From the NCBI RefSeq assembly GCF_032191835.1, contig NC_083223.1:142166001-142230000 (forward strand): DNA of 64,000 nt, written 5' to 3'. Position numbers and translations under genes: made by a program. Numbering within the stretch: position 1 is the first letter of the stretch; every line of letters starts with the position of its first letter. Under the pieces are notes generated by a model, which was not told the DNA's origin, made no database searches, and worked only from the letters and a program-made list of their open reading frames with translations. This document shows positions 13,175 to 46,249 of the stretch, piece by piece. The stretch is from Heteronotia binoei (taxonomy: Eukaryota).

Positions 13175-14475
13175 CCGTCCTTCATCCCCTTCAGTCCGGC
13201 TTCTGCCCAGGCCATGGGACGGAGAGGGTGCTGGTCGCCCTAGTAGATGACCTGCAATGGCATCTGCATCGGGGCGGCTCGGCGGTGCTGATGTTGTTGG
13301 ACCTATCGGCAGCGTTTGATATGGTTGAGCATCGGCTACTGGCCCGCCGCCTCGCCGACGCGGGGATTCAGGGGTTGGCCTTGCAATGGCTTTCCTCTTT
13401 CCTTGAAGGTCGGAGACAGAGGGTCGCTATTGGGGATGAGCTGTCCCGGAGGCACACGCTTGATTGCAGGGTGCCTCAGGGTGCAGTTCTCTCCCCAATG
13501 TTATTTAACATCTATATGCGTCCCCTCGCCCAGATTGCCCGAAGGTACGGGCTGGGTTGTCACCAGTATGCTGATGACACCCAGCTCTATCTGCTTATGG
13601 ACGACTGGCTGGTCTGTAGCCCACAAAATCTGGACTGGGCGTTACAGGCTGTGGCTGGGTGGCTCAGGCTGAGCGGGCTGAGGCTAAATCCGGCAAAGAC
13701 AGAGGTCCTTTGCTTGGGCCGTCGGGGTCCGGGAAGGGAAATCCCCCTTCCGGTTTTTGACAGAGCGCCGCTGATTGCGACGCATAGGGTCAAGAGCTTG
13801 GGGGTACTACTGGAGCCTTCCTTAACAATGGAGGCCCAGATAGCAGCCACTGCCAAGTCTGCATTTTTCCATCTTAGGCAGGCAAGGCAGCTGGCTCCCT
13901 TCCTGGAGCGCAACGATCTAGCAATGGTGATCAATGCAATGGTCACCTCGAGGTTGGACTACTGCAATGCCCTCTACATGGGGCTGCCCCTGTGCCGAAC
14001 CCGGAAATTGCAGTTGGTGCAGAACGCCGCCGCCTGGTTGTTATTGGGGCTCCCAAGATGGGAGCACATCCAGCCGGGACTCTGGGCTCTGCACTGGCTG
14101 CCAATACTCTACCGAGTTCGGTACAAGGTGCTGGTCATTACCTTTAAAGCCCTATATGGCCTAGGACCTGCCTACCTGAGGAACCGTCTCTTCCCACACG
14201 TTCCCCAGAGAGTACTGAGATCAGGAACTCAAAATCTCCTTGTTGTCCCCAGGCCAAAGGAAGCCCGTTTGAAAACTACAAGGGACAGGGCCTTCTCCGT
14301 AATGGCCCCTTCCTGGTAGAACCAGCTGCCGGAAGAGGAAAGGGCCCTGTGGGACCTTGCTCAATTCCGCAGGGCCTGTAAGACAGTCCTCTTCCGGCTG
14401 GCCCACAACTAACCGGCACTGAACCTGAACTGAGTATAGCTGTAAGATTGCTGTATGATTTTAATGTTTACGTAT
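13175..14475 (+). pseudogene. L2-clade LINE, 5'-truncated RT region plus start of 3' UTR
   Basis: ORF 13228-14319: LLDLSAAFDMV, VPQGAVLSPMLFNIYM, HQYADDTQLY, LHWLP. Premature TAG at 14317-14319 (probably TGG>TAG). The 3' UTR is interrupted by the RTE and resumes at 18573. Confidence 0.92.
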
Positions 14476-14501
14476 CTTGGCTTGGCTTCGCGAACGAAGA
14501 T

Positions 14502-17500
14502 TTAAGAAGGGTGAAATAGTCCACGTCTGCTGCAGGCTCGCTGGTGGCTGACAAGACCAATGCGGGACAGGCAGGTCCGGCCACAGTGGCTGCAGGGAAA
14601 AGTCTGATTTAGGGTTGGTGCTGTAGCAGTGCGATTCTTCCTCAATCTCCTTTTGTCCTCAAGACCAGCTATGCGTGCGTTCTCAAAAGAAGAGACAGCC
14701 TGGTGGATGGTGTGCCTCCATGCTTTGCGATCTGAGGCTAGGTCAGACCACTGGTAATGGTTGATGCGACAGGTGCCAAGGGATTTCTTCAAGGAGTCCT
14801 TGTACCTCTTCTTTGGTGCCCCTCTATTTCGATGGCCGGTGGAGAGTTTGCCATACAGGGCAATCTTGGGAAGGCGGTGGTTTTCCATCCTAGAAATATG
14901 CCCTGCCCAGCGCAGCTGCGTCTTCAACAGCAGTGCCTCGATGCTGGTAACCTCCGCCCGCTTGAGAACTTCAGTGTTGGTCACAAAGTCACTCCAGTGG
15001 ATGTTGAGGATGGTGCGAAGGCAGCGCTGATGAAAGCGCTCGAGGAGTCGCAGGTGATGACGGTATAAAACCCACGATTCGGAGCCGTAGATGAGGGTTG
15101 TCATCACAACTGCTTTGTAAACATTGATCTTTGTGCCTTTTTTCAGATGCTTGTTGCTCCACACTCTTTTGTGCAGTCGGCCAAAGGCACGGTTTGCCTT
15201 TGCCAGCCTGTTGTCAATCTCCTTGTCGATCTTAGCATCTGAGGAGATGATGCACCCCAGGTAGCTGAACTGCTGGACTGTCTTCAGAACTGATTCACCC
15301 ACAGTGATGCAGGGAGGGTGATAATCTTCCTGGGGTGCAGGCTGGTGGAGAACTTCTGTCTTCTTCAGACTAACTTCTAGGCCGAATAGCTTGGCAGCCT
15401 CTGCAAAGCAGGACGTCATATGCTGCAGAGCTGATACCGAGTGGGAGACGAGTGCAGCATCATCAGCAAACAGTAGCTCTTGGATGAGTTTTTCCATTGT
15501 CTTGGAGTGGGCCTTTAGTCGCCTCAGGTTGAACAGGCTGCCATCGGTGCGATAGCGGATGTAGACACCATCGTCATCATCTAGATCTACTGCGGCTCTT
15601 TGAAGCATCATGCTAAAGAACATCGTAAAGAGAGTTGGCGCGAGAACGCAGCCTTGCTTTACACCTGTGCTTATTGGGAAGGTCTCCGAGAGGTCGTTGC
15701 AGTGTCTGACTTGGCCTCGCTGGTCTTCGTGTAGCTGGATGATCATGCTGAGGAACCTTGGAGGACATCCTAAACGTTCCAAGATTTGCCACAGGCTTTT
15801 CCTGCTAACGGTATCGAAAGCTTTGGTAAGGTCGACAAAAGTCACATACAGAGCCTTGTTCTGTTCCCTGCATTTCTCTTGGAGCTGCCTGAGAACAAAT
15901 ACCATGTCGGTGGTGCTCCTGTTAGCTCTGAAGCCGCACTGGCTCTCTGGGAGGAGTTCTTCTGCAATGGCGGGCACCAGTCTGTTCAGGAGTATTCTGG
16001 CAAGGATTTTGCCTGCGATGGAGAGCAGGGTTATCCCCCGGTAGTTGGAGCAGTCTGACTTTTCCCCTTTGTTCTTGTATAGGGTGATGATGATTGCATC
16101 GCGAAAGTCCTGTGGTAATTTGCCTTGTTCCCAGCAGGTGACAAGTACTTTGTGAAGTGAGCTATGTAGTACTGTGCCCCCATGCTTCCAGATCTCTGGT
16201 GGAATTCCATCAACTCCTGCTGCCTTGCCACTTTTCAGTTGCTTGATGGCTTTAACAGTCTCTTCTAGAGTGGGGATCTCATCCAACTCTGTTTTCACTG
16301 GTTGAAGTGGGGTGAGGTGAATTGCTGAATCTTGAACTACGCGGTTGGCACTGAAGAGAACCTGAAAATACTCCGACCACCGGTTCAATATGGATGCCTT
16401 GTCTGTGAGGAGCACTTGGCCGTCTGCACTACGCAAGGGACTCTGAGTCTGATATGATGGACCATATACTGCCTTCAGGGCTTCGTAGAACCCTCTTAAA
16501 TCACCAGTGTCTGCACACAGCTGGGTTCTCTCAGCAAGCTTGGTCCACCACTCGTTCTGAATGTCTCGAAGCTTGCACTGGAGGTTGCCACATACAGCGC
16601 GAAAGGTTGCTTTTTTCCTAGGACAGGAGGGCTGAGCAAGATGTGCTTGGTAGGCAGATCTCTTCTTCGCCAGTAAATCTTGGATCTCGTGATTGTTCGC
16701 ATCAAACCAGTCCTTGTTCTTCCTTGTGGAGAACCCGAGGACTTCTTCAGAGATCTGCAGGACGGTAGTTTTTAGGTGTTCCCAGAGTGCTTCTGGAGAA
16801 GGGTCTGTGGGGCAACTGGGGTCCTCAATTCTTGACTGGAGTTTTGCCTGGAAGGCAGCTTTAACTTCGGCTGACTGGAGACTGCCAACCTGAAACTTCC
16901 TCCGAGGGATACCTCCTCTCCTGGGTGTGGGTTTAAAGTGAAGACGGAGATTGCAGCGTACAAGACGATGATCCGTATGACATTCTGCACTGGGCATTAC
17001 TCGGGTGTGTAAGACTTCTCGAAGGTCTCTCTGGCGCACCAGAATGTAGTCGATAAGGTGCCAGTGCTTGGACCGTGGGTGCATCCAGGTTGTCTTCAGA
17101 CTGTTCTTCTGCTGGAAGATAGTGTTGGTGATGGTGAGCTGGTGCTCCATGCAGAATTCTAGCAGGAGGCGCCCGTTGTCATTGCAGTTGCCAATGCCGT
17201 GTTTGCCAAGTACTCCTTTCCAGGCTTCCGAGTCTTTACCTACTCTGGCATTGAAGTCGCCAAGGATGATCACCTTGTCCTCTGTAGGGGTCTTCCATAC
17301 GAGGTTGTGTAGATCAGCATAGAACTTGTTCTTTTCTGCAGGATCTGCTTGAAGGGTTGGGGCATACACACTGAAGAGTGTTGCATGCTGCTTGTTTTGA
17401 AGTGGGAGGCGCATGGACATGATGCGATCTGAGTGACCTGTTGGCAGGTTTTCGAGTTTGGAGGCAATGGAGTTCCTGACCATGAAGCCAATGCCAGAAA

Positions 17501-17726
17501 GGCGGCTCTCAGCCTTTGACTTACCTGACCAATAGAGGGTATAGCCAGCACCGTGTTCTTGAAGACTACCTTCCTCAGGGAAACGGACCTCACTGAGAGC
17601 TGCTATGTCGATATTCAACCTGAGAAGTTCGTGGGCAACTAGAGCAGAGCATCGTTCAGGGCGACCACTGTCTACTGTGTCAAGCATGGTTCTGATGTTC
17701 CAACACACAAGCTTTAGTCTTTGCAC
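14502..17726 (-). CDS. RTE ORF2: APE endonuclease - reverse transcriptase - C-terminal C2HC zinc finger
   Basis: WNIRT, LSE, VYAP, LGDFNARVG, IDY and TDH endonuclease motifs. NYRGITLL, QCGFR, FVDLTKAFD, GVKQGC, LFADD and YLG RT motifs. CSHCGRTC...HQRAC finger. No internal stop; the frame is open from 17801. Track start is GTG. Confidence 0.95.
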   Translation of the reverse strand: MQRLKLVCWNIRTMLDTVDSGRPERCSALVAHELLRLNIDIAALSEVRFPEEGSLQEHGAGYTLYWSGKSKAESRLSGIGFMVRNSIASKLENLPTGHSDRIMSMRLPLQNKQHATLFSVYAPTLQADPAEKNKFYADLHNLVWKTPTEDKVIILGDFNARVGKDSEAWKGVLGKHGIGNCNDNGRLLLEFCMEHQLTITNTIFQQKNSLKTTWMHPRSKHWHLIDYILVRQRDLREVLHTRVMPSAECHTDHRLVRCNLRLHFKPTPRRGGIPRRKFQVGSLQSAEVKAAFQAKLQSRIEDPSCPTDPSPEALWEHLKTTVLQISEEVLGFSTRKNKDWFDANNHEIQDLLAKKRSAYQAHLAQPSCPRKKATFRAVCGNLQCKLRDIQNEWWTKLAERTQLCADTGDLRGFYEALKAVYGPSYQTQSPLRSADGQVLLTDKASILNRWSEYFQVLFSANRVVQDSAIHLTPLQPVKTELDEIPTLEETVKAIKQLKSGKAAGVDGIPPEIWKHGGTVLHSSLHKVLVTCWEQGKLPQDFRDAIIITLYKNKGEKSDCSNYRGITLLSIAGKILARILLNRLVPAIAEELLPESQCGFRANRSTTDMVFVLRQLQEKCREQNKALYVTFVDLTKAFDTVSRKSLWQILERLGCPPRFLSMIIQLHEDQRGQVRHCNDLSETFPISTGVKQGCVLAPTLFTMFFSMMLQRAAVDLDDDDGVYIRYRTDGSLFNLRRLKAHSKTMEKLIQELLFADDAALVSHSVSALQHMTSCFAEAAKLFGLEVSLKKTEVLHQPAPQEDYHPPCITVGESVLKTVQQFSYLGCIISSDAKIDKEIDNRLAKANRAFGRLHKRVWSNKHLKKGTKINVYKAVVMTTLIYGSESWVLYRHHLRLLERFHQRCLRTILNIHWSDFVTNTEVLKRAEVTSIEALLLKTQLRWAGHISRMENHRLPKIALYGKLSTGHRNRGAPKKRYKDSLKKSLGTCRINHYQWSDLASDRKAWRHTIHQAVSSFENARIAGLEDKRRLRKNRTATAPTLNQTFPCSHCGRTCLSRIGLVSHQRACSRRGLFHPS

Positions 17727-17848
17727 ACTTTGTGAGGCAGGTGCATGCCTTTTCTTTGTTGCTATTTTTTGACCGCAAGTAAGGATGCCCGTTGACCGCG
17801 GCTAGCCAACTGGGTTGGAGGAGACGAGCTTTGTTTAGGCCACCTTTT

Positions 17849-18172
17849 CTAGGCCCCTCTCCGTGTGGAGCAAGCAGTGCTGTCCCTAGATAAGGCTGCT
17901 TGGTCGTTCAGGGTGCTGCCGAAAAATGCTTTCGTCTCCGGGTTAGCATCAGGCGACCAATACCCTGAACCGCCTACATGCAGGATCAGGACTGCGGCTT
18001 CCAGTGGCACCTTCCACCTGCCGTTTCGCCCCTTGCCCATCGCTGCAGGACTTGATGCGTTGTGGGTTGTGTATGTGGATATGCCCTTCAGGCCTGCGCA
18101 GAGGAATTTTTTAGGTGAAGCCCAGTGTGCGCGGTACTGGCTCCACCCTTTCACCTGGGGGTCATCTGCCAT
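17849..18172 (-). CDS. Short upstream ORF (107 aa) in the RTE 5' region, function unknown
   Basis: ATG-initiated, in a different frame from ORF2, lying between the predicted ribozyme and ORF2. No recognisable domain. Confidence 0.4.
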   Translation of the reverse strand: MADDPQVKGWSQYRAHWASPKKFLCAGLKGISTYTTHNASSPAAMGKGRNGRWKVPLEAAVLILHVGGSGYWSPDANPETKAFFGSTLNDQAALSRDSTACSTRRGA

Positions 18173-18344
18173 GGCCCAATAAGCCGGGACGCCGGCAGCG
18201 AGTCCTCCAGGTGGTAGGTGTTACATTAACGAGCTCTATCTGCCCGGGTTTGATGTTAGAGTTTTCCTTCTCTTAGGCTGGCAAGGTTGGTGGGCCCAGC
18301 CTGCCCATCCGGTTATACCGCCGGACAATTCGGTCGCACCATGA

Positions 18345-18553
18345 CGTAGCAAACTCTGTGAAAAACGGGGGGGACCAGCGAGAAGGTGTTGCTACGGATG
18401 CAGTAATGCAGGAGAGGCCATTGCAGTTACCATCTGCCAGGCATAGCCAGACAGTGACCACGCGGCATTCACTACACCGGGAGAGGAGAGGCTATGTATT
18501 GCGCATACACTTTCCCTGGGGGGGTAGGATACCCAGAGGGAGCCCACCCCCCC
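18345..18553 (-). ncRNA. Predicted HDV-like (CPEB3-like) self-cleaving ribozyme at the RTE 5' end
   Basis: Hand-folded double pseudoknot on the minus strand: P1 G7 (18553-18547) with C7 (18373-18367); P2 CGUAGCAAC (18396-18388) with GUUUGCUACG (18354-18345, 1-nt bulge); P3 ACC/GGU; L3 UUCUCGCU; GU after P1; J4/2 CAGA (candidate catalytic C at 18358); P4 minimal. Confidence 0.7.
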
Positions 18554-18572
18554 ACCCCCAATGTTTACGTAT

Positions 18573-18700
18573 ATAACCGTGACAAATGTCTAGATTTTAA
18601 CTATGTAAATTATGAAATGTTAACCTTTTATGCTTAATTTTATATTCTTATGTTAGTTTTAAATGTTAATTTTTATATGTTGTAAGCCGCCCTGAGCCAC
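18573..18700 (+). mobile_element. Continuation of the L2 3' UTR after the RTE insertion
   Basis: AT-rich UTR ending TGTAAGCCGCCCTGAGCC; truncated before the tail and fused to a MITE. Confidence 0.8.
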
Positions 18701-19216
18701 CTTCTGCATAACAACTTGCTTTGCAAGGCTTCCTCAATTCCACAGGAACTACAGAGCAAAACCTCTATTTTCTCCATTGGCTGAGGCTCCTCCCTTGGGG
18801 AGGAAGGGGGGAGGAATAGCTGGCTTTGCCAGGCTCTCTCAGTTGCACAGCTAAGCTACTGAGCCGAGCCGCTCTTCCTTCTATTGCCTGAGGCTCCTCC
18901 CCCCATTCCCTGGGGAAGAAAGGAAAGAGCCAGAGCTTCCTTTGCTCAGTTCCCTGGACTCCATGGGCAAAATGCAAAGAAAGCATCTTTAAGTCCAAAA
19001 AGTGCTAATGTTTAAGCATATTTTAAGTTTTTTAAAATATATTTATTTGTGTTTGTCCGTGTTCTTTTTAAAATTTATATCTCTGCTACCTAATCTTAAA
19101 TAGGTACACACATGGCCCAGCCCGACATGACTCAGCCCAACCCGACATGGTCCGTCCCAACAAGGTCTCATTTATGCAAGATCTGGCCCTCAAAATGAAT
19201 GAGTTTGACACCCCTG
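18701..19216. mobile_element. CAGGGGTGTCAAAC-family hAT-type MITE, left end deleted
   Basis: Colinear with 47445-48045. Right TIR GTTTGACACCCCTG at 19203-19216. Confidence 0.85.
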
Positions 19217-30069: not shown

Positions 30070-33000
30070 ATGGCCAACCAGGGCAGAAACACCGGTCACG
30101 TTGAGCCGTTCGACCCCGCGAATCCCGAGGCCTAGGAGTCCTACTTGGAACGAGTCGAATGCTACCTGAGGGCCAACAAAGTCACGGAGGACAGTATGAA
30201 GAGGGACGTTCTCCTGAGCGTCTGCGGGGCGGCCACCTTCGAGATCGCTAAAGGTCTCTCGGCCCCTGCCCGCCTCACGGAGAAGTCCTTCGCGGAAGTC
30301 AGCAGACTCCTCACCGGCCACTTCTTGCCTCAGCCTTCGCGGGTGGCCCGCCGGTTCCTGTTCCACAAAAGGGACCAGGCTGCTGGAGAATCAGCTGCCA
30401 ATTACCTGGCGGCCCTACGCAGGATCGCTGGGAACTGTAACTTCCCTCAGCTAGAGGAGACCCTGGCCGATCGCTTCACGTGGGGTCTCCGCGACGAGAG
30501 GCTCCAGCAGAAGCTCTTCGCCAAAGAGGAGCTCACCCTCCAGAGCGCCTTCAGCGAAGCCGTGGTGTTCGAGAGGACCTCGAGGACCTTCCCCAAGGCC
30601 CGGTAGGACGCCGTTCACCATGAGGATCTGGACCACGACCACCCAGAGGAGGGAGAAGCCCACCAGCCGCGCCGGCCAGCCGGGCCACCCAACCGAGCAT
30701 CCCAGCGCCCCCGAGCGCCCGAACGACCCCCAGCGGCGGAGAGGTCTCCAGCCACCAAGTGCGCCAGCTGCGGCGACCCCCACGACAGGCAGGACTGCCA
30801 GTACTGGACCTGGGACTGCCAGAGCTGGCGGAAGACCGGACACATCGCGAGGGCCTGCCGGGCCAGGCCCAGCCATCGGAGGCCGGCCACCCACCAAGAG
30901 TCGGCGGAGTTCCACGCCACTGCCTCCACGTCCCTACAGGTACTGAACTTGCCCCTAAGCGTCCCTAACAAAATCAAAATGGCGGTCCTAATAGAGGGAG
31001 CCCCATGCCAAATGGAGGGGGACTCGGGTTCCTCCATTTCAATTATATCGGAGGAGACCCTGAGGAACCTGTGTCCCGGGCAGCGGTTTCAGACAAGACC
31101 GGCGGACTTTGTTCTAAGGGACTTTCAGAAGAACCCGGTCCAAATCGCGGGGTGGGCCCGGGTGCACGTCGAGTGGGGGTCCTTCAGGGGGCCGTTGGAC
31201 ATTCTGGTGGTCAAGCACCAGCTGACCACCCTGTTAGGACTGGCATGGTTCAAACCCCTGGGAATACGGATGGAAGGGGTGGGGCAAATCATATCCACCA
31301 GTGGGGTCGGGGATGTATGCCGCGAGTTCCCCAACATATTTGATGGGTCCCTGGGGAGCTACAAGGGGCCGGCCATCTCCCTACCGCTGGACCCCACGGT
31401 CCGACCAATCAGGCTCAAGGCCAGAAGTGTCCCATTCGCCCTCAAGCCCAAAATAGAGGCTGAACTGGACCGCCTAATGGCCCAAGGGGTACTGGAGCCA
31501 GTAGACTACGCCACGTGGGAGACCCCAATAGTCACACCGGTCAAGCCTAACGGAGAGGTGCGGATCTGTGCCGACTATAAGTGCACCATAAACAGGGCAC
31601 TTCAAGACAATCCGTACCCAGTACCGGTAGTAAGCCACGTTCTGGCAGCTCTAGCGGGGTCAAAGATCTTCGGGAAGCTGGACCTGGCACAGGCCTATCA
31701 GCAGCTCCCGGTAGATGAAAAAACGGCAGAGGCCCAAACCATTGTCACACACAGGGGGGCCTTCAGGGTGCGGAGGCTACAGTTCGGGGTGAGCGTGGCT
31801 CCGGGGATCTTCCAAAGCATAATGGACGCTCTCCTTAAAGGAATCCCCGGAGTCCAACCGTTTTCCGACGATGTTTTGATCGCCGCTCCCGACCCCGAGG
31901 AATTCAACAACCGCCTCCGAGAAGTGCTCCGCCGGTTCCAGTCTGCGGGGCTCAAAGTCAAGCGGGAAAAGTGCTTACTGGGTGTCCCGTGAGTGGAGTT
32001 CTTAGGGTTTGCTGTAGACGCAGCAGGGATCCACCCGACGGAGGAGAAAACATGAGCCATTGTACAAGCCCCGGCCCCCACATGCAAAGCTGAACTCCAA
32101 AGTTTCTTGGGGTTGCTAAATTTTTATCACACGTTCCTCCCACACAAGGCAGCCTTGGCAGAACCACTACACCGGCTGCTAGACAAACACGCCCCTTGGG
32201 TATGGGGCAAACACCAAGCCGCAGCGTTCCAGGCGGTTAAAGACACGCTGGTCTCAAATGCAGTGCTCCACCACTTCGATGAGCGCCTTCCGGTCATACT
32301 GGCTTGTGACGCATCGCCATACGGGGTTGGCGCCGTCCTGGGGCACCAACTCCCAGACGGGAGGGAGGTGCCAGTAGCATATTACTCCCGCACGCTCACG
32401 CAGGCAGAGCGCAATTACGCGCAGATTGATAAAGAGGCTCTGGCCATAGTAGCGGGGGTCCACAAGTTCAACGATTACCTTTATGGGCGGAGGTTCACGA
32501 TCGCCACCGACCACAAGCCGCTCTTGGGTCTGCTAGCGCCGGACCGCCAGACCCCACAAATACTGTCCCAGAGGGTACTGAGGTGGAACCAGTTCCTAAA
32601 TTCCTACATGTACACACTGGTCCACCGAGCGGGCAAGTCCATGGGCCACGCGGACGCGCTCAGTCGCTTGCCGCTACCCGAAGTGGGTCCAGACCCCGTC
32701 CCCACACACCACATCATGCTAGTGGAGAGCCTCCCGGAACAACCCCTCCACGCAGCGGAGGTCGCCAAGGCCACCCACAGACACAAGACACTGGCACGGG
32801 TGCTCGACTGGGTGGTGAGGAAGTTGGCCAGAAGGGAACATGGGGGAAGAATTCAAACCATATAAAGCTAGGAGGGAGGAACTAGCAGCCCACAAAGGGT
32901 GCCTCTTTTGGGGAAGTAGGGTGGTGGTTCTGCCCCCGCTACAAAAGCGTGTACTGGAGTCCCTACATGAGACCCACCCCGGCATAGTCCGAATGAAGGC

Positions 33001-34098
33001 CTAGCCAGAAGCTACGTCTGGTGGCCGGGGATGGCCGGGGAGATTGAGAGCTGGGTTCGAAGGTGCCAGGCATGCCAGGAATCACGGCCCGAACCTCCCA
33101 GCGCCCCCGCCACACGGTGGGAGTCCTCCAGAAAGCCGTGATCGAGACTTCACCTCGATTTCGCGGGGCCATTCCAGGGGCAGGTCTTCCTGATAATCGT
33201 GGACGCCTACACCAAATGGCTGGAGGTCTTTCCCGTAGCATCCACGTCCTCAGCCTCCGCCATCCGGGCACTGCGCAGGGCATTATGCACCCACGGCATT
33301 CCAGACACTATAGTCTCGGACAACGGGGCGGCCTTCACCTCTGGGAAATTCCAGGCGTTTCTCCAGAGGTACCTGATCAAACACATAAGGTCCGCCCCGT
33401 TTCATCCGGCCACCAACGGCCAGGCAGAGCGCATGGTGCGCACCACAAAAGAAGCCCTCAGCCGGATCGTACAGGGGGATTGGGAACACCGACTAGCGGC
33501 TTTCCTGTTCGACAACCGGGTGATTCCCAACCCTGTCACGGGGGTGAGCCCGGCGGAACTCCTCATGGGGCACAAGCTCATAACCCAGCTGGACAGGCTG
33601 CACCCCGACAGGGCTTCAGACATTCGCGGGAACCCCGAGGTCCGGGACGCGGCCCGGGGTTTCTTTGCAGGCGATCCGGTATACACCCGAAACTATGCTA
33701 GGGCCCCCGAATGGGTGGCGGGCCGAGTGCTGAGAGTCACGGGGTCCCACCACTACGATATATCAACCGAAGGGGGCCAGGTCGTATGGCGGCACATTGA
33801 CCAACTACGCCGCCGCACACTACCAGAAGAACCAGCGGACATAGAAGAGGCGAGACCCGGGGAGGAGCCACCCAGGGGTCGACCAGAGGACGCCGCCCCA
33901 ACTCCCAGTATACCGGCGCACGAAGCGCCCGGGCCGGCAGAGCCCGAAAGACCCGCGGAACCAGACCAACAGCCTCCGGCCGCATCACCACCCGCAGAAC
34001 CACCGGCAGCCGGAGCCGCGCCTCCCCCACAGGATCCCCTAAGACGGTCCACCAGGGAGCGCCGACCTCCCGCTTATCTCAAGGACTATATACATTAA
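30070..34098 (+). pseudogene. Gypsy gag-pol single reading frame, disrupted
   Basis: GCCACCATGG start. Zn-knuckle remnants (CASCGDPH..C; C..W..GHIARAC), protease DSG, RT (KLDLAQAYQQL, F(S)DD), RNase H (DASPYG, TDHKPL), integrase HHCC and D,D,E (LDFAG, SDNG, AERMV). Stops at 30133, 30604, 31990, 32053 and 33139; compensating frameshifts near 32815 and 33000. Confidence 0.93.
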
Positions 34099-45319: not shown

Positions 45320-46249
45320 TACCAGGCGCTGAGTGGTTTAGAATAGGAAAAGGAGTTAGACAAGGATGTATATTGCCACCCTGCTTATTTAATTTATATG
45401 CAGAGTACATCATGCGGAATGCTGGCCTGGATGAAGCACAAACTGGAATTAAGATTGCCAGGAAAAACATCAACAACCTCAGATATGCAGATGACACCAC
45501 TCTAATGGCAGAAAGTGAGGAGGACCTAAAGAACCTCCTGTTGAGGGTGAAAGAGGAGAGCACAAAAGTAGGCTTGAAACTCAACATCAAAAAAACTATC
45601 ATGACATCTGGACCCATCACACCTTGGCAAATAGAAGGGGAAGACATGGAAGTAGTGACAGACTTTACTTTTCTGGGATCCAAGATCACTGCAGATGGTG
45701 ACTGTAGCCATGAAATTAAAAGATGTTTGTTCCTTGGGAGGACAGCTATGGTGAACCTGGGCAGTATAATAAAAAGCAGAGACATCACCCTGCCAACAAA
45801 AGTCCGTATAGTCAAAGCGATGGTATTCCCAGTATGGGGATGGCTGTGAGAGCTGGACCATAAGGAAGGCCGAGCGCAGAAGAATAGATGCTTTTTAGCT
45901 GTGGTGCTGGAAAAGAATCTTGAGAGTCCCTTGGACTGCAAGAAGATCCAATCAGTCAGTCCTAAGGGAAATCAACCCAGACTATTCCCTGGAAGGTCAG
46001 ATGCTGAAGCTCAAATACTTTGGCCACCAAATGAGAAGGGAGTGCTCACTGGAGAAGATTCTGATGTTAGGAAAGACAGAAGGCAAAAGAAGAAGGGGAC
46101 AGCAAAGGATAAGATGGCTGAACAGCATTACTGATGTAACAAATACGAATTTGAGCAGACTTCGGAGGATGGTGGAAGACAGGAGGCATGGCTTTGTCCA
46201 TGGGGTCGCAAAGAGTCAGACTCGACTGTGCGACTGAACAACAACAACA
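45320..46249 (+). mobile_element. BovB (RTE clade) 5'-truncated copy
   Basis: GKGVRQGCILPPCLFNLYAE, NNLRYADDTTLMAESEE, HEIKRCL, KSRDITLPTKV, LKLKYFGH; 3' end GGGGTCGCAAAGAGTCAGACTCGACTG..CTGAACAACAAC. Frameshifted. Confidence 0.92.

What the first reader, a model, noticed from the sequence alone, without database searches (positions are those of the whole stretch)
14463..18572. Intact, full-length RTE nested in an L2 3' UTR; candidate active and horizontally transferred family
Seen: perfect 13-bp TSD and a 3.3-kb frame without stops or frameshifts, retaining all endonuclease and RT motifs plus the C-terminal zinc finger. Every other large TE in the window is broken. The protein is clearly different from the BovB at 45320. 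Inference from recall: the N-terminus (LKLxCWNIRTMLDT...RPERxSAL, GAGYTLYWSGK, KLENLPTGHSDRI) resembles AviRTE-like RTEs, a lineage known for horizontal transfer between birds and filarial nematodes. The copy could be retrotransposition-competent, although some residues look like CpG decay (e.g. ERCSAL).
Basis: partly seen in the sequence, partly recalled or inferred. Interest (0 to 1): 0.7.

Follow-up and report, generated by a model that had tools for sequence, protein, structure and literature searches.

The report
Intact AviRTE-related RTE LINE in lizard
This is a complete, frame-intact copy of a young, abundant RTE-type jumping gene in a gecko-like lizard genome, whose closest relatives are in birds (AviRTE), amphioxus, fish and marine invertebrates rather than other reptiles, so the family probably arrived by horizontal transfer, although this copy has already started to decay.

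Summary
A 4,084-bp minus-strand element (14476-18559) sits between perfect 13-bp target-site duplications inside the 3' UTR of an L2-like LINE. It carries one open frame of 1,074-1,099 codons with endonuclease, reverse transcriptase and a C-terminal CCHC motif.

The AviRTE recall is right at clade level:
- About 79% protein identity to the published AviRTE consensus.
- A near-identical 3' end and the same conserved 5' UTR.
- It is not inside AviRTE proper. Relatives in amphioxus, a sea anemone, carp, urchins, shrimps and unnamed contigs are equally close (71-82%), and the tree backbone is unresolved.

No squamate protein appears among the hits, although the database holds many squamate retrotransposon proteins. 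That favours horizontal acquisition but does not prove it.

The family is high-copy, 5'-truncated, transcribed and present in several coded organisms. This copy differs from the family majority by 1.3-1.8%. It has at least 20 amino-acid changes in a neutral pattern, so its competence is doubtful.

The frame has no AUG before the essential endonuclease N-terminus, a clade-wide trait. It follows a ~300-nt 5' UTR RNA structure with strong covariation, which I consider the most interesting result.

The scan noted the same family elsewhere in this genome.

The parts
14463..14475 (.). Target-site duplication, copy next to the element's 3' end
   Evidence: Exact 13-mer AATGTTTACGTAT; only two matches in the window, 0.05 expected.
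14476..14486 (-). 3' terminal short tandem repeat (GCCAA)2G, in place of a poly(A) tail
   Evidence: Read from the sequence. The same tail is in relative L001, and a near-identical one (GCCAAGCCATG) in the AviRTE consensus. Other relatives carry (GCAA)n, (ATG)n or (CAA)n.
14486..14499 (-). 3' UTR hairpin CUUCG-UUCG-CGAAG, the presumed site recognised by the reverse transcriptase
   Evidence: Identical in L001 and AviRTE. L002 keeps the stem with a different loop. Distant relatives have a different hairpin at the same place. The function is inferred by analogy with stringent-type LINEs.
14502..17801 (-). Single large ORF (ORF2-type): open frame 17801 to 14505, stop TAA at 14502-14504. First start-like codon is GTG at 17726; first ATG at 17687-17685.
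   Evidence: dN/dS is about 0.10 against L001.
16959..17702 (-). AP-type endonuclease domain; its CWN motif lies upstream of the first ATG
   Evidence: Pfam PF03372 and PF14529. The CWN(I/V)RT motif upstream of the ATG is conserved in all relatives.
15246..16061 (-). Reverse transcriptase domain with the FADD motif
   Evidence: Pfam PF00078, E = 8.7e-36.
14532..14594 (-). C-terminal CX2CX12HX3C (CCHC) zinc-knuckle-like motif
   Evidence: Read from the translation. Conserved in P0001-P0007 and in AviRTE. No Pfam hit.
17760..18060 (-). Conserved structured RNA block of the 5' UTR, 12 helices spanning 17788-18049, ending just before the coding region
   Evidence: 77-89% nucleotide identity to relatives whose ORF2 is 69-75% identical (L001, L002) with saturated dS. 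Detected in 34 of 80 loci. 34 of 55 pairs show compensatory changes. 93% of cells are paired, against 34-45% in slid controls, and 0 of 500 shuffles reach the observed values. Also present in AviRTE.
18075..18227 (-). Middle 5' UTR module conserved with L001, L043, L049 and AviRTE
   Evidence: 75-79% nucleotide identity. Matching sequence in the AviRTE supplement. Its structure was not analysed.
18247..18559 (-). 5' terminal module, starting with G-runs at the exact 5' junction; site of the HDV-like ribozyme proposed elsewhere in this scan
   Evidence: Element positions 44-313 are about 70% identical to the 5' regions of distant RTEs (L036, L031, L062, L051, L065) whose ORF2 is about 40% identical. 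Rfam gives no HDV or CPEB3 match. The ribozyme fold was not established here.
18560..18572 (.). Target-site duplication, copy next to the element's 5' end
13228..14462 (+). Host LINE: L2-like RT C-terminal ORF (13228-14319) and the first 143 nt of its 3' UTR, interrupted by the RTE
   Evidence: Pfam RVT_1. The best protein hits are all squamate, and the highest identity is to the gecko Heteronotia binoei at 79%.
18573..18700 (+). Continuation of the host LINE 3' UTR after the insertion
   Evidence: Sequence. Contigs of paralogous copies run on from about 18698-18702 with GGGCGGGATATAAAT (table 7), so this copy is cut or rearranged near 18700.

Best explanation
What it is (shown): a full-length copy of a young, high-copy RTE-clade non-LTR retrotransposon. 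It inserted in antisense orientation into the 3' UTR of an L2-like LINE in a gecko-like squamate genome and made a 13-bp target-site duplication.

Anatomy (shown): an ~830-nt 5' UTR, one ORF encoding AP-endonuclease, reverse transcriptase and a CCHC motif, and a 26-nt 3' UTR made of a small hairpin plus a (GCCAA)2 tail.

Lineage (shown): it belongs to the lineage that also holds AviRTE of birds and filarial nematodes, and close relatives in amphioxus, cnidarians, cyprinid fish, a ray, sea urchins, crustaceans and molluscs.

Mechanism (inferred from the known biology of RTE and stringent-type LINEs): the ORF protein binds the 3' hairpin and tail of its own RNA, nicks the target and reverse-transcribes in place.

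Translation (first part shown, second part inferred): the frame has no AUG before the catalytic CWN motif, so translation must start unconventionally. It probably starts under the direction of the conserved structured RNA that ends 28-69 nt before the codon of that motif's tryptophan (W).

Origin (inferred, my odds about 0.6): the family probably entered the host lineage horizontally.

This copy (shown to have changed since its origin; competence inferred, my odds about 0.3): it has drifted neutrally by 1.3-1.8% since it left the family majority. More likely than not it is no longer a competent source element.
For: - TSD and boundaries.
- ORF and domains.
- RTE-type 3' end: hairpin plus short repeat tail, identical to L001 and, but for its last letters, to AviRTE.
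- Kinship: about 79% identity to the AviRTE consensus ORF over the first 291 aa (manual count). 72-78% to bird copies (Manacus, Willisornis). 75-82% to amphioxus, Exaiptasia-cluster and unnamed contig proteins.
- Trees: the same core clade is well supported (95-99% SH-aLRT).
- Selection in the lineage: dN/dS is about 0.10.
- Young, abundant family: DNA contigs of several coded organisms hold it, with 3'-biased depth (330 down to 10), and their contigs differ 1.3-1.8% from this copy. RNA reads cover the whole element.
- Composition: GC is 52% and CpG o/e 0.52, against 0.25-0.29 in the flanks.
- Host is a squamate.
- No squamate protein is among the 120 listed hits of either RTE search.
- AUG-less frame: seen in 22 of 28 related loci, including 6 of the 8 with a full-length frame.
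- Structured 5' UTR.
Against: - Horizontal entry is not demonstrated. dS to the nearest DNA relative is saturated (1.5), so no donor is sampled. Presence or absence in other squamates could not be tested.
- The absence of squamate protein hits could partly reflect TE masking in annotations and the 120-row listing limit.
- RNA reads come from unstranded libraries and follow the DNA copy profile. They may be read-through of truncated copies rather than element-driven transcripts.
- No reads pile up at the 5' end, so the 5' processing of the RNA is untested.
- The differences of this copy from the family majority show a neutral N:S ratio (20:12 against 1.96 expected). They include at least 4 clade-invariant sites.
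- No empty-site allele was seen, but the DNA runs are shallow.
Confidence: 0.8

Rival explanations
1. The family is an old, vertically inherited squamate RTE that was recently reactivated. Its likeness to elements of aquatic animals and birds reflects slow evolution of a conserved LINE lineage, not transfer into this host.
For: Presence or absence in other squamates was not tested. dS to the nearest DNA relative is saturated. Squamate genome annotations often mask TEs, so missing protein hits are weak evidence.
Against: The database clearly holds many squamate LINE-derived proteins from Podarcis, Anolis, Varanus, Naja, Heteronotia and others. None of them appears among the RTE hits, while bird, fish, amphioxus, echinoderm, crustacean, mollusc and cnidarian copies do, at 66-82%. 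The clade is star-like and does not follow the host tree: birds nest among marine taxa. GC and CpG content are well above the host background.
Confidence: 0.25
2. The element is a member, or the immediate sister, of AviRTE proper. It would then belong to the same bird and filarial-nematode transfer network and extend that network to lizards.
For: It shares recalled and verified motifs, the ~800-nt 5' UTR, the 3.2-kb ORF and a near-identical 3' terminus. Part of the 5' UTR (element positions about 250-335) matches AviRTE but not L001 or L043. The tree constrained to window plus birds scores 1.96 lnL units better than the free search, with AU p = 0.625.
Against: About 79% amino-acid identity implies a nucleotide distance well above the ~0.10 mean (0.055-0.146 in the pairs seen) among AviRTE consensuses. 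Backbone support is low, with ultrafast bootstrap 12-60. Rare states shared with birds number 3, within the 0-4 range of control sequences. Unnamed contigs and amphioxus are as close or closer.
Confidence: 0.15
3. This copy is itself a retrotransposition-competent source element.
For: The frame is uninterrupted, all catalytic motifs are present, both ends are complete and the TSD is perfect. It departs from sites conserved in 95% or more of the clade at only 7 of 331 positions, within the 0-30 range of relatives.
Against: It shows 32 well-supported ORF differences from the family majority, 20 of them amino-acid changes in a neutral ratio. They include R26C, V79I, D237E and E960K at clade-invariant sites. 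4-17% of simulated neutral copies keep an open frame at this divergence, so in a high-copy family an open frame is weak evidence. It also carries an extra base at 18107 in the 5' UTR relative to most copies.
Confidence: 0.3

Closest known systems
AviRTE (Suh et al. 2016, Nat Commun 7:11396, PMC4844689)
   Same: Same architecture: ~800-nt 5' UTR, ~3.2-kb single ORF and a very short 3' UTR. About 79% protein identity over the first 291 aa. A near-identical 3' terminus (TCTTCGTTCGCGAAGCCAAGCCA). The same conserved 5' UTR block, including the TAG in the last hairpin loop. The first ATG falls at the same MLDT position.
   Different: The host is a squamate, not a bird or filarial nematode. Divergence is several-fold larger than within AviRTE (0.055-0.146 substitutions per site in the pairs seen). 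Monophyly with AviRTE is unresolved. Unlike the AviRTE copies reported, which all have frameshifts and stops, this copy has an intact frame.
RTE-Snek, RTE-Kret and Proto2-Snek of sea snakes and sea kraits (Galbraith et al. 2020, PMC7846101)
   Same: These are young RTE-superfamily LINEs in squamates whose nearest relatives are in aquatic animals. They have 5'-truncated high-identity copies and transcripts, and are interpreted as horizontal transfers.
   Different: Here the host appears to be a gecko-like lizard, not a marine elapid. Sequence relationship to the Snek families could not be tested because no sequences were at hand.
RTE-1 and BovB (classical RTE clade; Malik and Eickbush 1998, from my own knowledge)
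   Same: AP-endonuclease plus RT in one large ORF. Short 3' UTR with a simple-repeat tail. An ORF without its own conventional start codon.
   Different: Only about 26% identity to the BovB-like RT fragment in this window. No conserved overlapping ORF1: the 10-codon uORF at 17746 and the 107-codon ORF at 17849-18172 are not conserved in relatives or in the family majority.
Structured 5' RNAs of R2 elements (HDV-like ribozyme; the 5' protein-binding pseudoknot region) and dicistrovirus IGR IRES (from my own knowledge)
   Same: A conserved, covarying RNA structure at or near the start of an ORF that lacks an AUG. In R2 the 5' ribozyme promotes initiation and a 5' RNA segment binds the element's protein. 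The IGR IRES starts translation at a non-AUG codon.
   Different: There is no sequence or Rfam match. The block is internal, about 500-800 nt from the 5' end, and about 300 nt long with 12 helices. Its function is untested.

Membership tests
RTE clade of non-LTR retrotransposons | One large ORF with an N-terminal AP-type endonuclease followed by a reverse transcriptase | tested here: met
   Pfam PF03372 and PF14529 at residues 9-256, and PF00078 at residues 556-827.
RTE clade of non-LTR retrotransposons | Very short 3' UTR ending in a short tandem repeat, not poly(A) | tested here: met
   26-nt 3' UTR made of a hairpin plus (GCCAA)2G. Relatives carry (GCAA)n, (ATG)n or (CAA)n.
RTE clade of non-LTR retrotransposons | Groups with named RTE elements by sequence | tested here: met
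   71-82% identity to a large set of endonuclease-RT proteins, and about 79% to AviRTE, which is labelled LINE/RTE-BovB in its own supplement. No Repbase-wide RT tree was possible.
AviRTE sensu Suh et al. 2016 | Nucleotide distance among member consensuses of about 0.10 (pairs seen: 0.055-0.146) | tested here: not met
   About 79% amino-acid identity, by manual count of 60 differences in about 291 residues on the text. For comparison, 77% amino-acid identity to L001 corresponds to 75% nucleotide identity. This is an approximate test: the AviRTE DNA could not be loaded for alignment.
AviRTE sensu Suh et al. 2016 | Monophyly with bird and nematode AviRTE copies | tested here: inconclusive
   Birds are monophyletic at 100/100. 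The window's placement is unresolved. The AU test does not reject window plus birds as a clade (p = 0.625). There is no excess of shared rare states.
AviRTE sensu Suh et al. 2016 | Architecture and terminal sequences: ~800-nt 5' UTR, ~3.2-kb ORF, ~40-nt 3' UTR | tested here: met
   5' UTR of about 830 nt, ORF of 3.2-3.3 kb, 3' UTR of 26 nt. The 3' terminus and the 5' UTR block match the AviRTE consensus text.
AviRTE sensu Suh et al. 2016 | Host range restricted to certain bird lineages and filarial nematodes | tested here: not met
   The flanking LINE has its best hits in squamates, with the top identity to the gecko Heteronotia binoei.
BovB | Close sequence relationship to BovB RT | tested here: not met
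   Only 26% identity to the BovB-like RT fragment at 45328-45825. No reference BovB sequence was available.
HDV-like self-cleaving ribozyme at the LINE 5' end | Nested double-pseudoknot fold with the cleavage site at the first base of the element | tested here: inconclusive
   No Rfam HDV, CPEB3 or drz match at E up to 1. The 5' module is conserved with distant RTEs, but the six-sequence alignment gives little covariation. Read depth at the 5' end is too low to see a cleavage end. Other reports of this scan treat it.

The most novel reading that the evidence does not exclude
The ~300-nt covarying RNA structure directly upstream of the AUG-less ORF could be a new class of retrotransposon translation-initiation element. 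It is conserved across this whole RTE clade, from AviRTE and this lizard element to relatives with only about 40% ORF identity. It might act like an IRES that places the ribosome on a non-AUG codon. Alternatively it could be a 5' protein-binding RNA like that of R2. In addition, this lizard family may be the sister of AviRTE, which would add squamates to that transfer network.
Probability: 0.25. Interest if true: 0.8.

Novelty: new member of a known kind. Interest (0 to 1): 0.55.

Why it matters
In 2016 AviRTE was described as shared only by some birds and filarial nematodes. This element shows that the same RTE lineage is alive, with an intact frame, in a lizard, and that it is widespread in aquatic animals. 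That reframes AviRTE as one branch of a very mobile, cross-phylum lineage. It also offers a natural frame-intact copy for functional work, which AviRTE lacked.

Separately, the clade-wide lack of a start codon, together with a strongly covarying 5' UTR structure, makes a long-standing question directly testable: how do RTE elements translate their ORF?

Tried and rejected
I could not see the source samples or DNA of the closest proteins (P0001-P0004), which remain unnamed.
- Rfam on the whole element gave only chance-level hits.
- ORF1 ideas were rejected. The 107-codon ORF at 17849-18172 has no Pfam hit. It overlaps the structured RNA. Its frame is also altered in most family copies, which lack one base at 18107.
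- The 10-codon uORF at 17746 is absent from AviRTE and L001.
- Reading the 5' UTR block as coding was rejected. Different relatives join different frames to ORF2, and the helices covary.
- A hammerhead reading of CUGAUG...CGAAA in the block was rejected, because the core A9 is missing and Rfam gives no hit.
- Empty-site polymorphism: the joints at 14384>18678 and 14402>18676 and the loose end at 18573 are paralogous L2 copies, not the empty allele. The result is inconclusive.
- The EN-domain tree could not resolve the backbone. I did not build a full-length tree with birds, because only fragments of bird copies were available.
Identity to it is therefore a manual count on tool text, and no joint nucleotide tree was built.
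- Literature searches found no description of the RTE 5' UTR structure, nor of an AviRTE-like element in squamates, in the held library. That is not proof of absence.


Full report
**Observation.** The 13-mer AATGTTTACGTAT occurs exactly twice in the window, at 14463-14475 and 18560-18572, against 0.05 matches expected by chance. The 4,084 bp between the two copies form a minus-strand element with no second copy in the window. Its frame is open from 17801 down to a TAA at 14502-14504. The ORF listing reports 1,074 codons from a GTG at 17726. Pfam finds an AP-type endonuclease at residues 9-256 and a reverse transcriptase at residues 556-827. The catalytic residues, the FADD motif and a C-terminal CX2CX12HX3C motif are present. 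Apart from the N-terminal Asn, which the database proteins do not reach, they lie in columns invariant among eight relatives. All other TE reading frames in the window are fragments of 363 aa or less, including a split LTR-retrotransposon pol at 30949-34098. The BovB-like piece at 45328-45825 is only 26% identical. The first ATG is codon 14.

**Setting.** The element interrupts a plus-strand LINE, 156 nt after the stop of that LINE's RT ORF (13228-14319). The LINE's 3' UTR resumes at 18573. That ORF's best database hits are all squamate, from Podarcis, Anolis, Varanus, Naja and others. The highest identity, 79%, is to the gecko Heteronotia binoei. The host is therefore a squamate, probably a gecko relative. 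This agrees with earlier notes of this scan, which I treated only as a lead. I did not test whether the host LINE is L2 rather than another member of the CR1/L2 group.

**Ends.** The 3' UTR is 26 nt long: a hairpin, CUUCG-UUCG-CGAAG, followed by (GCCAA)2G. The same 3' UTR is present in L001, a metagenome contig whose ORF is only 77% identical, and a near-identical one in the AviRTE consensus. More distant relatives carry a different hairpin and other short repeats at the same place. This is the RTE type of 3' end. Its role as the reverse transcriptase's recognition site is inferred by analogy with stringent-type LINEs.

**Family.**
- The full ORF finds 1,528 proteins, but none above 80% identity. 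Unnamed contig proteins reach 79-80%.
- Named full-length hits are Branchiostoma lanceolatum 77%, a cluster that includes Exaiptasia 77%, Cirrhinus 71%, Diadema 71%, and Oratosquilla and Penaeus 66%.
- The endonuclease part alone also finds bird copies annotated 'craniofacial development protein 2-like' in Manacus, Willisornis, Lepidothrix and Pitangus. These are suboscine hosts of AviRTE. It finds further hits in a ray, molluscs, corals and echinoderms.
I counted 60 differences in about 291 aligned residues, or about 79% identity.
- AviRTE also shares the 5' UTR block and the 3' terminus.

**Trees.** In endonuclease-domain trees the bird copies are monophyletic (100/100), and the window element lies in the same well-supported core clade. 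The backbone of that clade is a star, with ultrafast bootstrap values of 12-60. An AU test does not reject window plus birds as a clade: p = 0.625, and the constrained tree scores 1.96 lnL units better. The window shares 3 rare states with birds, against 0-4 for control sequences. So the element is AviRTE-related, not AviRTE proper, and its sister group is open.

**Horizontal transfer.** The lineage as a whole does not follow host phylogeny. No squamate protein appears in either RTE hit list, although the database is rich in squamate LINE proteins. The element has 52% GC and a CpG o/e of 0.52, against 0.25-0.29 in the flanks. These points favour horizontal entry into the host lineage. Against this, dS to the nearest DNA relative is saturated (1.5 to L001, 3.4 to L002; dN/dS about 0.10). 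No donor is therefore sampled and no date can be given. Presence or absence across squamates could not be tested with the tools at hand. I put horizontal entry at about 0.6.

**Activity.**
- Near-identical sequence is held by runs of several coded organisms in eight studies.
- DNA contig depth rises from about 10-17 over the 5' two-thirds to about 330 at the 3' end. This is the usual 5'-truncation profile.
- Contigs differ from this copy by 1.3-1.8%: 42 of 3,128, 25 of 1,358 and 11 of 805 positions.
- RNA reads from two transcriptome runs cover the whole element. The libraries look unstranded and the depth follows the DNA profile, so read-through transcription is not excluded.
- Of 33 well-supported fixed differences from the family majority, 32 lie in the ORF. 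They split 20 nonsynonymous to 12 synonymous, against a neutral expectation of 1.96:1, and 9 are at CpG sites.
- At least four hit sites conserved in 95% or more of 39 relatives (R26C, V79I, D237E, E960K). In total the copy departs at 7 of 331 such sites, where relatives range from 0 to 30.
- Simulated neutral change of 32-58 substitutions leaves the frame open in 4-17% of copies.

The family is young and was recently, perhaps still is, active. This copy is a slightly decayed member whose open frame is weak evidence of competence. No exact empty-site read was seen, but the DNA runs are shallow.

**Translation start and the 5' UTR.**
- The peptide L(K/N)LACWN(I/V)RT upstream of the first ATG is conserved in all relatives. 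It contains the Asn of the AP-endonuclease SWN motif, so it must be translated.
- 22 of 28 related loci have no in-frame ATG upstream of it, including 6 of the 8 with a full-length frame. The AviRTE authors also began their ORF at MLDT.
- Directly upstream lies a ~300-nt block (18060-17760). It is 77-89% identical to relatives whose ORF2 is only 69-75% identical (L001, L002) at the nucleotide level.
- nhmmer finds the block in 34 of 80 loci, down to elements with about 40% ORF identity. In the loci checked it ends 28-69 nt before the codon of the motif's tryptophan.
- Different relatives join different frames of the block to ORF2, so the block is not coding.
- On 24 sequences RNAalifold predicts 55 pairs in 12 helices, and 34 pairs show compensatory changes.
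- 93.3% of cells are paired, against 34-45% when partners are slid. There are 229 double-change cells against 20-35 in the slid controls, and 0 of 500 shuffles reach the observed values.
- The in-frame TAG at 17804-17802 sits in the loop of the last hairpin and is shared with L001 and AviRTE.

I infer that translation starts unconventionally, just downstream of or within this structure. The alternative is a protein-binding role like that of the 5' RNA of R2. I found no description of this structure in Rfam or in the held literature.

**The 5' terminal module.** Positions 44-313 of the element are about 70% identical to the 5' regions of distant RTEs. Other notes of this scan propose an HDV-like ribozyme here. 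I could not confirm or refute that. Rfam gives no match, the six-sequence alignment gives little covariation, and read depth at the 5' end is too low.

**Limits.** The AviRTE sequences could not be loaded into scripts, so identity to them is a manual count and no joint nucleotide tree was made. Run and organism names were coded. The same family was noted by this scan at other places in this genome.

Noticed in passing
window 17760-18060 (-): A ~300-nt structured RNA in the RTE 5' UTR. It has 12 helices, and 34 of 55 pairs show compensatory changes across 24 relatives. It is more conserved than the ORF, is present in AviRTE and has no Rfam family.
   Followed up: yes
window 17687-17801 (-), and loci L001, L002, L003, L005, L008, L009: The ORF has no AUG before the conserved CWN(I/V)RT endonuclease motif. 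This holds across the clade (22 of 28 loci). The frame opens inside the last hairpin loop of the structured block.
   Followed up: yes
window 18247-18516 (-); L036:614-898, L031:1603-1888, L062, L051, L065: The 5' terminal module is shared, at about 70% nucleotide identity, with distant RTEs whose ORF is only about 40% identical. Closer relatives (L001, L043) have an unrelated 5' end. The 5' UTRs therefore look modular, perhaps through recombination.
   Followed up: partly
window joints 14518>18071 and 14623>17848 (RNA run X24): RNA reads join the 5' UTR directly to the last 43-148 nt of the element. These look like internally deleted, SINE-like non-autonomous derivatives of the RTE.
   Followed up: no
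window 18107: Most family copies and both DNA contigs lack one base of the A-run here. That change alters the frame of the 107-codon ORF at 17849-18172, so it is not a conserved ORF1.
   Followed up: partly
window 14505-17726: Non-CpG differences from the family majority are strand-asymmetric. About 13 are C-to-T on the element's sense strand, against about 5 on the antisense strand. The cause is unknown: it could be subfamily structure or deamination of single-stranded intermediates.
   Followed up: no
window 30949-34098 (+): Remnant of an LTR retrotransposon pol gene (RT, RNase H, integrase), split over several frames.
   Followed up: partly
window 18698-18702: Paralogous copies of the host LINE continue here with ...GGGCGGGATATAAAT, while this copy diverges. 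The host LINE's 3' end is therefore cut or interrupted.
   Followed up: no
P0192, P0205, P0209, P0201, P0211, P0214 and others: Many RTE endonuclease fragments of birds and marine animals are annotated in NCBI as 'craniofacial development protein 2-like'. This name carries over from the RTE-derived CFDP2 gene.
   Followed up: no
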